Below the pieces are notes generated by a model that did not search any database, had not been told where the DNA came from, and saw only the letters and a list, made by a program, of their open reading frames with translations. From Octopus bimaculoides (taxonomy: Eukaryota): a stretch of 34,096 nt of DNA. This document shows positions 24,237 to 34,096 of this stretch, one piece after another (within the stretch, counting starts at the first letter, position 1; each line of letters starts with the position of its first letter). The stretch spans positions 76,769,129-76,803,224 of the forward strand of contig NC_068984.1 of assembly GCF_001194135.2 (NCBI RefSeq), in the 5' to 3' direction. A program made the translations under genes and the position numbers.

Positions 24237-24608
24237 GATACATTGAAAGAATTGTTCGGTGAATAGATTGAATTATCGGAGCTGTGGATTCGATGTGACA
24301 AACTGCCACCAGTAGTGCCATTCGAAGACATTGTGCAATACATTGTCGATTGAATAAAAAGTAAGTAAAATTTGCAAAATTAAAATGTGTTTAAAAAAAA
24401 AAGAATAAACTGTTCACGAACATGTATTGCATAAACAGTTAAATGACACTGTTTGCGTGTGGGGCGCAAGTAAAGCATTTCATTTTTCATTATATCACTA
24501 TATTCATATTCATTCGATTTATATTTTATGTACCCCACTATATTGTGTTGTCTGTCTTTGTTCGTCTCTTCTTTGTAAGAGCTATATACTCATAGTAAAG
24601 AATAAAGC
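23347..24608 (+). pseudogene. Copy 2 of ORF1/gag-like CCHC zinc-knuckle unit, disrupted
   Basis: CYYCGVQGHMQARC (C-X2-C-X4-H-X4-C) at 23576-23617 after LRVVVEGRPPI, EQEV repeats, K/E-rich region, frameshift in the poly-A run near 23811-23819, (GA)n expansion, stops, AATAAA at 24601-24606. Confidence 0.8.
24153..24229. repeat. (GA)n microsatellite inside copy 2
   Basis: Direct reading; absent from the homologous position of copy 1. Confidence 0.95.
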
Positions 24609-24624
24609 TAGCAAGTCAAAGTAC

Positions 24625-24667
24625 TCCAGACTGATGAAGAACAATAACTCTGAAATTAGTCTCTGGA
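24625..24667 (+). ncRNA. Minimal type I hammerhead ribozyme, intact core
   Basis: Stem I TCCAGA/TCTGGA (6 bp perfect), CTGATGA 24631-24637, stem II AGA/TCT with 8-nt loop, GAAA 24652-24655, quasi-palindromic helix III ATTAGT, GUC triplet 24659-24661. Confidence 0.8.
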
Positions 24668-24879
24668 TGCTGGCTTTGCTGGGTGGAGGTGCTTATCACG
24701 CTTGTTTGAAAACTTAAGGACACAGAACGCTTGTGTCACGTAGCCAACTGGAAACGATGTTTCCTGGGGCTAAATAGCAGTAGCATTCTTCCCTTTCCTG
24801 GGACTGCCACATTAAGTTGGCAATAAACCATCACTCTATAGATATCCTTTCGGAGAAAAGTAGAATTTTGCCCCATAAT

Positions 24880-25030
24880 ATAGGCGTAGGCGTGGCTGTG
24901 TGGTAAGAAGCATGCTTCCCAGCCACATGGTTCCAGGTTCAGTCCCACTGTGTGGCACCTTGGGCAAGTGTCTTCTGTTATAGCCTCGGGCCGATTGGAT
25001 TTGGTAGACGAAAACTGAAAGAATCCCATC

Positions 25031-25090
<60 letters not shown>

Positions 25091-25330
25091 ATGTACGTGT
25101 GTCTGTGTTTGTTTTCCACTCCACCGCCTGATAACCGGCGTTGGTGTGTTTATGTCCCCGTAACTTAACGGTTCGGTAAAGAAATCGATAGAGTAGGTAC
25201 CAGAGTTTACAAAAAGTACTGTGGTCAATATATTCGACTATAAATTCTTCAATGCGGTGCCCCAGCATGGCCGCAGTCTAATGACTGAAACGAGTAAAAG
25301 ATATAAGATAAAAGATAAAAGATAAAAGAT
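24880..25330 (+). mobile_element. SINE family A, full length
   Basis: GGCGTAGGCGTGGCTGTGTGG, GGTTCAGTCCC, CCTTGGGCAAGTG (CORE-like), internal (TA)n, tail (GATAAAA)n. Confidence 0.9.
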
Positions 25331-28200: not shown

Positions 28201-30070
28201 CAGGGACGTCAAACTCAATCGCACAGGGGGCCAAAACTCAAAGCACACTTTAGGTTACAGGCAGAACTGGATAAACATTTATTGAACAGACTAAAACTTT
28301 TTGAACATGAATATGTATTGAAACGGATGGTAAATAATTTTATTCCAAAAATAAATTAATTTACTTAAAATATTTGCTCTGCATAAAAATAGCTTCTATC
28401 AAAATTATAAAAATTTAAAATAACATGCTGCAAAAAAACAAAAAACCAACAAGAAAATATAAATAAAAAATGTGGTTTTTAGTGAAAATTAAAATAATGA
28501 ATCAAAACTTTCAATTTTCTTTATGCAATTTTGTCCGAACTACATACTTGGCATATTTTCTTGGCAACGAGTTCATTGATATTTGGGGGCAAGGCTATGT
28601 GTTGTTGAGACTCTCAGGGTGGGCTGAAGGTGTTCATCTGTGAGACGACTCCTATGTGATGGTTTATTCTTCAACACAGAGAACATCTGCTTGCACAGGT
28701 ATGTGCTTCCAAACAAAGACAGTGTTCGAACTGCATGTAAACGGAGCTGAGGTATTGTTCCAGGTGTGAAGCAAGTGAACTGTACGGGCCTCACAGAGTC
28801 GTACTTTGCTTTTAATGTCCCATTACACTGCAGTTCTATTAGCTCCATTTGAATCTATACAGGTAGAGTTACCACATTGACGGAAGCACTCAATTTATCA
28901 GCAAAGTGTTGCTATGGGAAGACCGTGTCGCTGACTTGGCTCACGATTACTTGGCAACAGGGAAAGTGAGACAAGTTCAATTGGTGTCCTTGTATCTCCC
29001 ATAAGCGCAGCTTCACTTGAAATGCCTTCACTGCGTCATACATATCACAGATCATGCGATTTCATCCCTGGAGGTGGATATTTGAAACATTGAGATGCGC
29101 AGTTATGTCAACCAGAAACGCCAACTCCCATTTCCACTTTTCATCCCGCAGAACTTTGGATTCTTTTCCTTTACTGTCCATGAACTGATATATCTCCTCA
29201 ACCAGCTCAAAAACTATATTGAAAACCTTTCCCCGACTGAGCCGCCGCACTTCCGTATGATAAGGTACGTCACAGAACTCTGAATGTATATCCCGCAGGA
29301 AAGACTGAAATTGGCGGTGATTTAACCCTTTGGCTCGGTTAAAGTTTACGGTTTGCGTTACAGAGCTCATTACATGTTCCATTTTAAGGCTTTAGCGCAT
29401 AGCATTTCCTGGTGTTTGATGCAGTGATATGTTGTCAACTCATCAGCGCAATTCTCTTCTTGCATCTTTAAACGTATCCCACCCACTAGTCGACTTTTTT
29501 CACCGAACATCGCGGGTGCTCCATCTGTTGTAAATCCAACAAGTTTGTCCCAAGGCAGTCTCATGTCAGTTACACTCATATTTTTTCAAAGAGATCTTTT
29601 CCTGTTGTCTCGTGCATCGATTTTATGTCCAAAATGTCCTCCATGACGAACAAATTGGACTCCACACCACGGATGAAGATAACCAGCTGTGCCGTATCAG
29701 TCGTGTCAGTCTGACACGACTGATTTGTCTTGATGTTTTGTCTCGTAGTGGCGTTTGAGATTATACTCTTTAAGTACAGCAACATTAGCACCACAATTAA
29801 AACACAGGAGTTTGTCATCAATGTTAGTAAACGTGTACTCGGTTTCCCACCAGATTTGAAAGGCTCTGTTTTCAGCATCGACTTTTCTCTTGGTCATTGA
29901 TATAGATAGCTACTACTACAGAATGACGTTACGTGAAAATGATCACCCAAAAGAGCGGCAACGCGGCTGTTGCGGTTCATTATGGCATTAGTAGATTTTA
30001 CGTCATCAGTGTTTCACAACACGCGATTAGAGAATCGAAGGACGTGTTACCCAGCATGCTTTGCTGTAGT
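28201..30070 (-). mobile_element. hAT (Buster/SPIN/GTF2IRD2-like) transposon, pseudogenised, one end missing
   Basis: TIR CAGGGACGTCAAACTCA at 28201 preceded by 8-bp GTCTAAAC (nnnTAnnn target). Transposase fragments: MTKRKVDAENRAF...LLCFNCGANVAVLKEYNLKRHYETKH (BED-like finger), TDTAQLVIFIRG, TTDGAPAM, HCIKHQE, EVRRLSRGKV, and SLFGSTYLCKQMFS...RSRLTDEHL (hATC dimerisation domain). Confidence 0.92.
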
Positions 30071-30114: not shown

Positions 30115-31720
30115 TAACCAAAAAAATCCATAAATGCAAAAGGAAAAGTGATGCCTGTAAATCTTCAGCAAGCAAATACACACAGTTAACACCTCCGGAT
30201 GATTTAAAACTGAGACCAGTCATAGAAAGCCAGGCATGTAAAACACACAGACTCAGCAACGTCTTGGACATCCTCCTAAAACTCTTCCTAAAACATATAC
30301 AGAGCTACATACGAGTTGACCTAGACATACTAAATCATCTGCCAAAAACGGTAAATAAACATCCAATTTTTACTTCATTTGATGTTGTCAGATTATATAC
30401 TAACATTCTCCATGACTATAGAATAACTGGTTAGACACTCACCAATCTGAACTTCCAACATGCATAGCAAAAAATGTATCATTCATACTTGAAAACAACT
30501 ACTTTACCTTTAACAGTTCGGATTACTGACAAACATCAAGAACTGTGATGGGTACGAAAATAGCTCCCACATACGCCAACTTAGTCATGATATTCCACTA
30601 GCAAAACATCTACGATCAATCTCTTCTAATATTCGGTGACACGTTTCATACACAACTCAAAAACAATTGGAAAAGATACTCTGACAAGCTAACTGAATTA
30701 AAAATTATATTAAACAACCTAAGCAATAACATCCAAGTCACAATGGAGTTTAACCCCAAAAAACTCGCCTTTCTGGATAGTCTAATCACAAACCAAGATG
30801 GGAAAATAGAAACGGATATATTCTACGAACCCACTGACTACAAACAATACATTCTTTTTACATCACGTCACCCGAAACGCACAAAACTCAACATTTCCTT
30901 CAATCTCGCAAAATGAATTTGTACAATAGTATCAGAACCATCCAAGCGTGAGCAAAGAGTAGAGTAACTGAGGGACACACTTATCTAAACAGCCTGCCCT
31001 CCTGTCATAATCACCAACGGAATAAACAAAGCAAAATAAATGGATATCGATGAACTTAGGAGAAGCCCCCCCCCCCAAAAAAAAAACAAAAAAAACAAAA
31101 GAAGGAAAAACGTCTTAGCATTTGTGTTAACCTTCAATCCCAGAAACACCGAAATATTTGAGCACATCTACAAAAACCTCACCATTTTATTTGCAGATGA
31201 AAAAAATGAGAAAAGTCTTATAAAACCAACAATCATCAAAAAGCAAAAGGCAGCCCCAAACACTAAAACTCATTCTCACTGGAACAAAAAGACAAAGAAA
31301 CCCCAACTCAACTGTCACAAGATGCGAAAGAACAAACTGCGGCACTTGCCGTTTACCTAATTGAGGGACCAGAATTTAAATTTAAAGACGGCCAAACCTT
31401 CAAAGTTAAATCCAATATCACCTGCAACACAGAAAATCTAATCTACGTAATCACACGCAATGGTTGCCAACATAATTACATAGGTCAGACGGGTGGATTG
31501 TTACGCAACAGAATGACGTCTCATCATCAACAGATCCGAGACAAAAACACGAGGAAAATTCCATTAAGCAGTCACATTGCAAACTGTTCAGGAAAAGACT
31601 TACTCAATTTCAAAATCTTTCCCCTCAACAAGTGTTCAGATGTTTCAGCCAACAACAAAGATTAAATAAAGGAAGGCAATTTATTAACAAATATAAGCCA
31701 CAATAGGATATAGAACCAAC
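30115..31720 (+). mobile_element. Penelope-like element, RT plus GIY-YIG, 5'-truncated pseudogene
   Basis: KIHK...LRPVI...SFDVVRLYTNI, MGTKIAPTYANLVM, LAFLD...TDIFYEPTD...HP...NI, C..CGTC, LIYVITRNGCQHNYIGQT...RNRMTSH (31441-31525), with stops and frameshifts. Confidence 0.92.
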
Positions 31721-33802: not shown

Positions 33803-33842
<40 letters not shown>

Positions 33843-34057
33843 TCTTTACTCTTTACTCTTTTACTTGTTTCAGTCATTTTGACTGCGGCCATGCTGGAGC
33901 ACCGCCTTTAGTCGAGAAAATCGACCCCAGGACTTATTCTTTGCAAGCCTAGTACTTATTCTATCGGTCTCTTTTGCCGAACCACTAAGTTACGGGGACG
34001 TAAACACACCAGCATCGGTTGTCAAGCGATGGTGAGGAAGCAAACACAGACACACAA

Positions 34058-34060
<3 letters not shown>
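33843..34060 (-). mobile_element. SINE family A, 3' half, young
   Basis: Very similar to 661-865; the rest probably continues beyond the window end after the internal microsatellite. Confidence 0.9.
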
Positions 34061-34090
<30 letters not shown>

Positions 34091-34096
34091 CATATA

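What the first reader, a model, noticed from the sequence alone, without database searches (positions are those of the whole stretch)
24601..24667. Compact hammerhead ribozyme with intact core directly downstream of the zinc-knuckle unit's poly(A) signal
Seen: all core nucleotides are present (CUGAUGA, GAAA, GUC), with a perfect 6-bp stem I and quasi-palindromic helix III, starting 18 nt after AATAAA on the same strand as the ORF. Known: minimal type I HHRs with palindromic helix III work as dimers and mark Penelope-like pseudo-LTRs and retrozymes. Inference: this could be the processing signal of an undescribed HHR-bearing non-autonomous retroelement carrying a CCHC nucleic-acid chaperone but no RT, mobilised in trans by PLEs. 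Caveats: the stem II closing pair is A-U rather than G-C, and copy 1 ends about 20 nt before the HHR position, so the HHR may be an independent neighbour.
Basis: partly seen in the sequence, partly recalled or inferred. Interest (0 to 1): 0.75.

Follow-up and report, generated by a model that had tools for sequence, protein, structure and literature searches.

The report
Hammerhead-like motif in an octopus retroelement tail
The hammerhead-ribozyme-like motif is really there and belongs to the conserved 220-base tail of a small octopus retroelement that encodes only a zinc-knuckle protein and inserts the way Penelope-like elements do, but nothing yet shows that it cuts RNA.

Summary
The motif at 24625-24667(+) is as described. 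It has a 6-bp stem I, CUGAUGA, a 3-bp A-U/G-C/A-U helix II, GAAA, helix III AUUAGU and GUC, with cleavage expected after C24661. A motif this good is expected about 2e-5 times per window, or about 1.4 times in a 2.7-Gb genome. No Rfam hammerhead model reports it, even at E<=10.

It is not an independent neighbour. It opens a ~220-nt module (24622-~24843) that follows the zinc-knuckle unit at the same junction in a non-orthologous Octopus sinensis locus (L001). That locus holds a second copy upstream of the ORF and an inverted truncated copy abutting it. It also shows two alternative 3' ends 53 nt apart. Together these match the insertion signatures described for Penelope-like elements (PLEs).

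The element (~2.2 kb) has no RT. Its CCHC region shows purifying selection (dN/dS 0.12).

Against a working ribozyme:
- 10.1-11.1 is A-U in all three copies.
- There is no covariation among the three copies.
- The motif is no better conserved than its surroundings.
- Two of the three copies are damaged.

Best reading (0.57): a decaying type-I hammerhead in the pLTR-like tail of a non-autonomous, PLE-mobilised element.

The parts
22609..23347 (+). Zinc-knuckle unit, copy 1. It is 5'-truncated behind a microsatellite, ends at AATAAAATAAG and lacks the 3' module. It keeps an open 134-aa C-terminal reading frame (22711-23115).
   Evidence: Local alignment with copy 2; repeat families D11 and D18-D20 with spacing 1200-1259; ORF list.
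23348..24606 (+). Zinc-knuckle unit, copy 2. It is 5'-truncated: it starts at the equivalent of L001 9977, about 455 nt into the ORF. The ORF is degenerate, with a frameshift near 23810-23830, a (GA)n insert at 24156-24230 and stop codons. It is followed by a 3'UTR and AATAAA at 24601-24606.
   Evidence: CCHC knuckle at 23576-23617 (Pfam zf-CCHC, E 1.1e-4, 22.6 bits against a cut-off of 20.8).
24607..24624 (+). Linker between AATAAA and the motif. CAAAGU 24617-24622 can pair with GCUUUG 24674-24679 to give a distal extension of stem I beyond an internal loop.
   Evidence: Centroid and MFE folds. Part of this stretch (13 nt, GTCAAAGTACTCC) is deleted in the L001 downstream copy.
24625..24667 (+). 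Type-I hammerhead-like motif: stem I 24625-30 / 24662-67; C3-A9 24631-37; helix II and loop 2 24638-51; G12-A15.1 24652-55; helix III 24655-24660 (AUUAGU); C17 = 24661. Predicted cleavage lies between 24661 and 24662.
   Evidence: Sequence; own descriptor; chance estimates; homologous copies in L001.
24622..24843 (+). 3'-terminal module of about 220 nt that begins with the motif. It is the best-conserved part of the element and ends at ...ACCATCACTCTAT (terminus T1).
   Evidence: 89% identity to L001 8904-9122 and 87.5% to L001 11117-11329. Identity by segment. All copies lose similarity at the same point. Fold z-score -2.66.

Best explanation
The motif is a type-I hammerhead of the metazoan dimer-dependent kind. 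It sits at the 5' edge of the ~220-nt 3'-terminal module of a ~2.2-kb octopus retroelement that has no RT. The element's layout is 5'UTR, a ~440-aa ORF with an N-terminal domain, one CCHC knuckle and a conserved C-terminal domain, then a 3'UTR with AATAAA, then the module. The element inserts by the Penelope-like route: 5' truncation, partial tandems that turn the module into a pseudo-LTR on both sides of the ORF, an inverted truncated copy at the 5' side, and two alternative 3' ends (with or without a 'tail'). Inferred mechanism: read-through transcripts of tandem or partial-tandem copies carry two motifs. Helix III (ACUAGU in the O. sinensis copies, AUUAGU here) pairs between two motifs and allows cleavage after GUC, which trims the element RNA. 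A PLE RT-EN supplied in trans then copies that RNA, starting inside the conserved module. The window copy is a solitary, 5'-truncated, decaying insertion with a broken ORF and no partner motif. It is probably inert today. Shown: the motif, its membership in the element, the repeat architecture and selection on the ORF. Inferred: cleavage, dimer use and PLE dependence.
For: All core positions and three helices of canonical metazoan type-I size are present. The published canon is helix I 6 bp, helix II 4 bp, and helix III 1-2 bp with a 2-4-nt palindromic loop. Here helix I is 6 bp; helix II is 3 of 4 pairs here and a different 3 of 4 in L001; helix III is a perfect palindrome, ACTAGT, in both L001 copies. 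Chance expectation is 1.8e-5 per window. The same junction and the same 3' terminus occur in two loci that otherwise share only dispersed repeats. In L001 the module flanks the ORF on both sides (92.5% identical). An inverted copy at 8763-8900 abuts the upstream one and runs 53 nt past terminus T1. This matches the published PLE signatures of pLTR, inverted 5'-truncated copy and tail and the usual position of HHRs in pLTRs. The module is the most conserved segment: 90% against 74-82% for the ORF and a dS of about 0.87. The CCHC region has dN/dS 0.12. PLEs live in octopus genomes, and a PLE RT/GIY-YIG remnant lies in this window. A PLE with a 3' HHR and an upstream zf-CCHC ORF is on record in green algae.
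Against: No Rfam hammerhead hit even at E<=10, although Rfam finds 235 Hammerhead_1 loci in a squid genome. 10.1-11.1 is A-U in all three copies, whereas G-C is highly conserved in canonical and PLE HHRs. Helix II is weak. The monomer prefers another hairpin (-11.8 against -6.0 kcal/mol). There are no compensatory changes in three sequences. The motif (85% identity) is no better kept than the rest of the module (90%). L001-up has A9->C and L001-dn has lost part of stem I. Only two loci could be examined. Copy 1 in the window ends at AATAA without the module. A PLE RT inserted RNA in vitro without needing HHR activity. There are no RNA data.
Confidence: 0.57

Rival explanations
1. The module is a real, conserved cis-acting 3' end of the retroelement (an RT recognition or initiation region, possibly the long hairpin 24608-24683), but the hammerhead resemblance is accidental or long dead. 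On this reading the RNA never needed to self-cleave.
For: No Rfam hit. A-U at 10.1-11.1 and a weak helix II. The MFE is an extended hairpin that sequesters CUGA. The motif is not better conserved than its neighbours. No covariation. PLE insertion in vitro does not need HHR activity. About 1.4 equally good chance motifs are expected per genome.
Against: A chance motif landing exactly in a pLTR-like repeat, where PLE HHRs normally sit, is a further coincidence on top of 1.8e-5 per window. The helix sizes and the perfectly palindromic helix III in L001 fit the metazoan type-I canon, which the descriptor did not require. Both lineages kept 11 of 11 core positions except for one change.
Confidence: 0.27
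2. The element is an LTR-type non-autonomous retrotransposon (gag only) whose ~215-nt LTRs carry the motif. This would be an animal analogue of the plant LTR retrozymes.
For: Direct repeats flank a gag-like CCHC ORF in L001. A purine-rich stretch (AAAGAATAAAG) precedes the downstream repeat.
Against: There are no TG...CA termini, no tRNA-complementary site after the upstream repeat, and no short TSD directly flanking the repeats. 5'-truncated copies (window copy 2, L001-up, L001-inv) and the head-to-head inverted copy are features of target-primed insertion, not of LTR elements. Plant LTR retrozymes carry type III HHRs.
Confidence: 0.08
3. The module is an unrelated HHR-bearing repeat (a retrozyme or PLE fragment) that merely lies next to the zinc-knuckle unit.
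For: Copy 1 in the window ends at AATAA without it. A mini-fragment in L001 (11991-12039) ends 13 nt after AATAAA.
Against: The identical junction is found in two non-orthologous loci in two species. No free-standing copy of the module occurs in 55 kb of octopus DNA.
Confidence: 0.05
4. The stretch is a small RNA gene: a C/D-box snoRNA (UGAUGA ... CUGA with a terminal stem) or a miRNA-like hairpin.
For: Weak Rfam matches: snoR160 16.1 bits, SNORD109A 13.5 bits, mir-305 14.3 bits on the minus strand.
Against: All lie far below gathering scores (42, 35 and 66 bits) with E of 0.8-6 on tiny search spaces. Only 12 nt separate the C-like and D-like boxes, too few for a guide region. CUGAUGA/CUGA is inherent to any hammerhead core.
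Confidence: 0.03

Closest known systems
Hammerhead motifs in the pseudo-LTRs of Penelope-like elements (Cervera & de la Pena 2014, PMC4209133; Craig et al. 2021, PMC8557442; Frangieh et al. 2024, PMC11167929)
   Same: A type-I motif in a terminal repeat made by partial tandem insertion. Helix III is too short to work as a monomer and is palindromic. An inverted 5'-truncated copy lies at the 5' side, there is an optional tail at the 3' end, and microsatellites sit next to the insertions.
   Different: The element has no RT or GIY-YIG ORF and encodes a CCHC protein instead. Helix II is short (3-4 bp, not 6-8). There is no unpaired nucleotide before 10.1, and 10.1-11.1 is A-U. In these respects the motif looks more like the 'canonical' metazoan type I than the PLE min-HHR.
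Metazoan non-LTR retrozymes (Cervera & de la Pena 2020, PMC7229834; Li et al. 2026 preprint, 10.64898/2026.07.22.740005)
   Same: Non-autonomous, with a type-I HHR, proposed to derive from PLE pLTRs and to be mobilised by PLEs. Some of their motifs depend on dimers.
   Different: Retrozymes are 170-400-nt non-coding tandem repeats with one HHR per unit. Here the unit is about 2.2 kb and coding, and it is seen only as a partial tandem. No circular RNA evidence exists.
[quoted passage not shown] 2021)
   Same: A gag-like CCHC ORF and an HHR in one PLE-type element.
   Different: Chlamys-2 is autonomous (it has EN and RT) and comes from algae. Here only the CCHC ORF is present, in a cephalopod.
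Plant LTR retrozymes (Cervera et al. 2016, PMC4918200)
   Same: Direct repeats carrying HHRs flank an internal region, and the element is non-autonomous.
   Different: The plant elements have type III HHRs, true LTR features (PBS, PPT, 4-bp TSD) and no ORF. None of these LTR features is seen here.

Membership tests
Hammerhead ribozyme, type I | Conserved core: C3 U4 G5 A6 N7 G8 A9, G12 A13 A14, A15.1-U16.1, H17 | tested here: met
   Window 24631-37, 24652-55, 24655/24660 and C24661. L001-dn has the same core; L001-up has A9->C.
Hammerhead ribozyme, type I | Three helices around the core, with helix I open-ended | tested here: met
   Helix I has 6 Watson-Crick pairs. Helix II has 3 pairs (A-U, G-C, A-U) plus an A.C. 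Helix III has 2 pairs and a 2-nt loop, or 6 pairs as a dimer. The helices are weak: the HHR fold is -6.0 against an MFE of -11.8 kcal/mol.
Hammerhead ribozyme, type I | G10.1-C11.1 closing pair of helix II (highly conserved) | tested here: not met
   A-U in all three copies. Natural compensatory variation at this pair is reported in cricket satellite HHRs.
Hammerhead ribozyme, type I | Recognition by the curated covariance models (Rfam Hammerhead_1 and relatives) | tested here: not met
   No hammerhead family at gathering score or at E<=10.
Hammerhead ribozyme, type I | Helices supported by compensatory changes among relatives | tested here: inconclusive
   Three sequences give 0 compensatory pairs. 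One one-sided change keeps helix III paired (C-G to U-G). The other changes break pairs.
Hammerhead ribozyme, type I | Site-specific self-cleavage after H17 | not testable with these tools
Penelope-like element insertion (pLTR architecture) | Partial tandem that makes a terminal direct repeat (pLTR) carrying the HHR | tested here: met
   L001 8904-9122 and 11117-11329 flank the ORF and are 92.5% identical. This was seen in one locus only.
Penelope-like element insertion (pLTR architecture) | Inverted 5'-truncated copy abutting the upstream pLTR | tested here: met
   L001 8763-8900 is the reverse complement of 9039-9175 (87%), head-to-head with the copy that starts at 8904.
Penelope-like element insertion (pLTR architecture) | Optional 'tail': two alternative 3' ends some tens of nt apart | tested here: inconclusive
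   Terminus T1 is shared by the window (~24843), L001-dn (~11325) and L001-up (9122). The inverted copy ends 53 nt further on. The published tail is 30-40 bp. This is a single example.
Penelope-like element insertion (pLTR architecture) | ORF with PLE-type RT and a GIY-YIG endonuclease | tested here: not met
   The unit holds only the CCHC ORF. None of the 10 long family members that were scanned has an RT domain. The element can therefore only be a non-autonomous dependant, not a PLE proper.
Penelope-like element insertion (pLTR architecture) | 3' module shared with an autonomous PLE of the same genome | not tested
   No octopus PLE locus with pLTRs could be fetched; L002 and L003 are not octopus. 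The PLE remnant in the window shows no similarity to the module.
Non-LTR retrozyme | Non-coding tandem repeats of 170-400 nt, each with a type-I HHR | tested here: not met
   The unit is about 2.2 kb with a ~440-codon ORF. There is only one motif in the 34-kb window.
LTR retrotransposon / LTR retrozyme | TG...CA termini, PBS, PPT and a 4-6-bp TSD | tested here: not met
   Inspection of the L001 repeat boundaries.
C/D-box snoRNA | Score at or above the Rfam gathering threshold, and a guide region between the boxes | tested here: not met
   Best score is 16.1 bits against a threshold of 42, and 12 nt separate the boxes.

The most novel reading that the evidence does not exclude
Octopus genomes hold a family of protein-coding, retrozyme-like elements. 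A gag-like CCHC ORF is bracketed by dimer-dependent type-I hammerheads, which excise a ~2.2-kb RNA (linear or circular) from tandem transcripts. That RNA serves both as mRNA and as the template for a Penelope-like RT supplied in trans. This would be the first animal HHR-bearing non-autonomous element that keeps its own selected protein.
Probability: 0.25. Interest if true: 0.7.

Novelty: new variant of a known kind. Interest (0 to 1): 0.45.

Why it matters
Known HHR-bearing animal retroelements are of two kinds: autonomous PLEs (RT-EN) and short non-coding retrozymes. An RT-less element that keeps a CCHC protein under purifying selection together with a PLE-type, HHR-bearing tail would be an intermediate form. 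It would bear on two open questions: how retrozymes arise from PLEs, and whether PLE-type mobilisation can use a nucleic-acid-binding protein supplied by the passenger. It would also be an HHR variant with A-U at 10.1-11.1 that the standard covariance models miss, so HHR censuses in cephalopods may be undercounting. If the motif proves inert, the finding reduces to an ordinary decayed repeat with a look-alike sequence.

Tried and rejected
There are no data on transcript ends, circular junctions or copy number.

2. Rfam: gathering and E<=10 searches on the window and L001 gave no hammerhead. The weak snoRNA and miRNA matches were rejected on score.

3. More copies of the zinc-knuckle unit:
- P0001, P0003 and P0004 are not on record with contigs.
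- A profile search again found only Octopus proteins and no new locus.
- Exact look-ups of 10 window and L001 ORFs found none in the collection.
- A pattern scan of the JGI metagenome contigs gave 0 matches.

4. Octopus PLE loci for comparing pLTRs: the search seeded with the window's PLE remnant led to L002 and L003. These are not octopus and hold no HHR or module.

5. LTR model: no TG/CA termini, PBS or TSD, so it was rejected.

6. Orthology of the window and L001: rejected, because only dispersed repeats are shared.

7. Structure of the CCHC protein: the AlphaFold model from a 5-sequence alignment has pLDDT 41.7. That is too poor for a fold search, so none was run.

8. tRNA or SINE origin of the module: no tRNA found.

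9. Proteins from the search of protein representatives were not used for contig look-ups, because the tool states that they are not eligible.

Full report
**Observation.**
- AATAAA lies at 24601-24606.
- TCCAGA (24625-30) pairs perfectly with TCTGGA (24662-67).
- CTGATGA is at 24631-37.
- AGA and TCT enclose an 8-nt loop (24638-51).
- GAAA is at 24652-55, followed by TTAG and then T24660 C24661.

In hammerhead numbering every core position is present (C3-A9, G12-A14, A15.1-U16.1, C17). The 10.1-11.1 pair is A-U. Helix III, AUUAGU, can form only between two molecules (6 pairs, two of them G-U). Cleavage would fall between 24661 and 24662. My own descriptor finds no comparable motif elsewhere in the window.

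**Chance.**
- Random sequence of this composition gave 0 equal-or-better motifs in 200 Mb, and 13 for a looser descriptor.
- A conditional simulation gives 2.6e-10 per nucleotide. That is 1.8e-5 per window and about 1.4 per 2.7-Gb genome on both strands.
- The motif is therefore very unlikely in one window but not impossible across a whole-genome scan, so context has to decide.

**Model-based and energetic tests are unfavourable.**
- Rfam reports no hammerhead family at gathering score, nor at E<=10 on 301-nt or 71-nt stretches, nor on the best related copy.
- Rfam's Hammerhead_1 does find 235 loci in a squid genome, so cephalopod hammerheads are detectable by that model.
- The only weak matches are to C/D snoRNAs and a miRNA (7-16 bits against thresholds of 35-66). 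They reflect the UGAUGA/CUGA boxes that any hammerhead core contains.
- As a monomer the RNA prefers a hairpin pairing AGACUGA with UUAGUCU (-11.8 kcal/mol) over the hammerhead fold (-6.0).
- Published metazoan type-I motifs also have a helix III too weak to work as monomers, so this last point is not disqualifying.

**Context in the window.** Two zinc-knuckle units lie in tandem.
- Copy 1 (22609-23347) is 5'-truncated behind a microsatellite.
- Copy 2 (23348-24606) begins in mid-ORF.
- Their homology ends at AATAA, so within the window alone the motif looks like a neighbour.
- Copy 2 is a pseudogene, with a frameshift, a (GA)n insert and stop codons.
- The CCHC knuckle lies at 23576-23617 (Pfam zf-CCHC).

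**The related locus settles whether the motif belongs to the unit.** All protein homologues are from Octopus. One, LOC118767225 of O. sinensis, could be fetched with flanks as L001.
- Window 24221-24843 aligns without interruption to L001 10732-11329. The alignment runs through the 3'UTR, AATAAAGCTAGCAA, the motif and a further 180 nt.
- Window 24622-24839 also matches L001 8904-9122 at 89%, upstream of the ORF.
- Outside the unit, the window and L001 share only dispersed SINE-type repeats. They are therefore separate insertions that carry the same junction.
- All copies lose similarity at the same point...ACCATCACTTTAT. That is a transposable-element terminus, which I call T1.
- The motif thus opens a ~220-nt 3'-terminal module of the element.

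**The three motif copies.**

| Copy | Sequence | Damage |
|---|---|---|
| Window | TCCAGA CTGATGA AGAACAATAACTCT GAAA TTAG TC TCTGGA | none in the core |
| L001-up | TCCAGA CTGATGC AGAGCAACTACCCT GAAA CTAG TC TCTGGT | A9->C |
| L001-dn | same as L001-up, with A9 intact | 13-nt deletion removes half of stem I |

- Helix III in O. sinensis is ACTAGT, a perfect palindrome. The published canon for dimer-dependent metazoan type-I motifs is helix I 6 bp, helix II 4 bp, and helix III 1-2 bp with a 2-4-nt palindromic loop.
- Helix II is A-U, G-C, A-U, A.C in the window and A-U, G-C, A.C, G-C in L001. An ancestor with all four pairs is as parsimonious as the alternatives but cannot be proved.
- Formal pair counting on three sequences shows no compensatory change.
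- The motif is 85% identical between species, against 90-91% for the rest of the module. There is no sign of extra constraint on the motif itself.
- A-U at 10.1-11.1 is shared by both lineages, so the active ancestor already had it. G-C at this pair is described as highly conserved, although compensated variants occur in cricket satellite hammerheads.

**Architecture of L001, in order along the locus.**
- An inverted copy, 8763-8900, which is the reverse complement of 9039-9175.
- The module, 8904-9122.
- A ~400-nt leader.
- The ORF, 9522-10864, now broken by a stop and frameshifts.
- The 3'UTR with AATAAA.
- The module again, 11117-11329.
- (TA)n and (TG)n microsatellites.

The two direct copies are 92.5% identical. 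The inverted copy runs 53 nt beyond T1 into the sequence that follows the upstream module. Two alternative 3' ends therefore exist.

**Match to published PLE features.**
- The literature describes insertions with heavy 5' truncation, partial tandems that form pseudo-LTRs, an inverted 5'-truncated copy at the 5' end, an optional 30-40-bp tail at one end, HHRs within the pLTRs and microsatellite targets.
- The tail is explained by two adjacent internal start sites of the PLE RT and is called a signature unique to PLEs.
- LTR-type features (TG/CA termini, PBS, short TSD) are absent here.
- PLEs are established in octopus genomes.
- The window holds a degenerate PLE at about 30150-31665(+). Its RT fragments match proteins carrying RVT_1, and it has a GIY-YIG domain. 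It shows no similarity to the module.

**The ORF.**
- The element has no RT.
- The protein family is large (398 clusters at 50% identity in the representative library). All named members are from Octopus.
- None of the 10 long members that were scanned has an RT domain.
- Between the window and L001 the CCHC region has dN/dS 0.12 with dS about 0.87 (63 codons), so the protein was under selection while the lineages diverged.
- The 3' module differs by only about 10%. It is either under strong constraint as a cis-acting end or was exchanged recently between lineages.

**Most likely mechanism.** This is inferred by analogy with PLEs and retrozymes.
- Transcripts that span two modules bring two motifs together.
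- The palindromic helix III pairs between the two motifs.
- Cleavage after GUC trims the RNA.
- A PLE RT-EN acting in trans starts cDNA synthesis inside the conserved module.
- The window copy has no partner motif and a broken ORF, and is probably a relic.
- AATAAA 18 nt upstream may serve to produce mRNA, but it is not the element's end.

**Rivals.**
- Conserved 3' module with only an accidental or extinct hammerhead (0.27). This remains serious: A-U at 10.1-11.1, no Rfam hit, no covariation, and PLE insertion in vitro does not need HHR activity.
- LTR-type element (0.08).
- Independent neighbour (0.05).
- Small-RNA gene (0.03).

**Limits.**
- Only two loci and three motif copies could be studied.
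- No octopus PLE with pLTRs could be fetched.
- The structure model of the protein was too poor to use.

**Verdict.**
- The element is a new variant of a known kind: a PLE-style, HHR-bearing, non-autonomous element that codes for a protein.
- Ribozyme activity is unproven.

Noticed in passing
window 30150-31665 (+): Degenerate Penelope-like element. Its RT fragments (e.g. ...KLRPVIES...FTSFDVVRLYTNI...) match proteins with RVT_1, and it has a GIY-YIG domain (Pfam E 9e-5). It ends beside a (CA)n/(CG)n microsatellite. It has no hammerhead motif and no similarity to the 220-nt module.
   Followed up: partly
window 28573-29900 (-): Remnant of a DNA-transposon-like gene: a Spin-doc-type zinc finger (PF18658, E 1.9e-8) and a weak hAT dimerisation match, split over several short ORFs.
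   Followed up: partly
L001 11966-12055: A 49-nt fragment holding the last ~35 nt of the zinc-knuckle 3'UTR plus AATAAAGCTAGCAAAGAC (96% identical to 11073-11121). It sits between two copies of CTTGAACTTGCACCAA, like a tiny insertion with a 16-bp target duplication, and ends 13 nt after AATAAA inside stem I of the motif. Window copy 1 also ends at AATAA. Some element RNAs may therefore end at the poly(A) site rather than at the module's end.
   Followed up: partly
window 23348-24843 compared with L001 9977-11329: Conservation rises towards the 3' end: ORF 74-82%, 3'UTR 85%, module 90%. Synonymous divergence in the CCHC region is about 0.87. Either the 3' end is strongly constrained or the element lineages have exchanged 3' ends.
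   Followed up: partly
window 24878-25315; also 270-1038, 7335-7493, 12935-13324, 17832-18028, 33837-34094: Several copies, in both orientations, of a dispersed SINE-like repeat (GGCGTGGCTGTGTGGTAAGAAG...), also present in L001 380-1400. One copy lies 35 nt after the module's end.
   Followed up: no
window 24156-24230: A (GA)n microsatellite replaces coding sequence in copy 2 at the point where copy 1 (22950-22975) reads ...LLEGDSADK... This is one of the lesions that break the copy 2 ORF.
   Followed up: no
window about 1100-1200, 2250-2400, 4650-4740, 13340-13800, 15940-16290, 17290-17790: Runs of N (assembly gaps), mostly next to microsatellites. They produce the large 'repeat' and 'inverted repeat' families and the X-filled ORFs. 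These are artefacts, not features.
   Followed up: no
window 24770-24806 (also in L001 up, dn and inverted copies): A 37-nt stretch, TTGGGGCTAAATAGCAGTAGCATTCTTCCCTTTCCTG, is nearly invariant in all four module copies. The L001 copies match each other exactly, apart from one change in the inverted copy, and the window copy begins CC instead of CT. The tail sequence TGCTACTGC is the reverse complement of GCAGTAGCA inside this stretch. It is a candidate RT recognition or initiation site.
   Followed up: no
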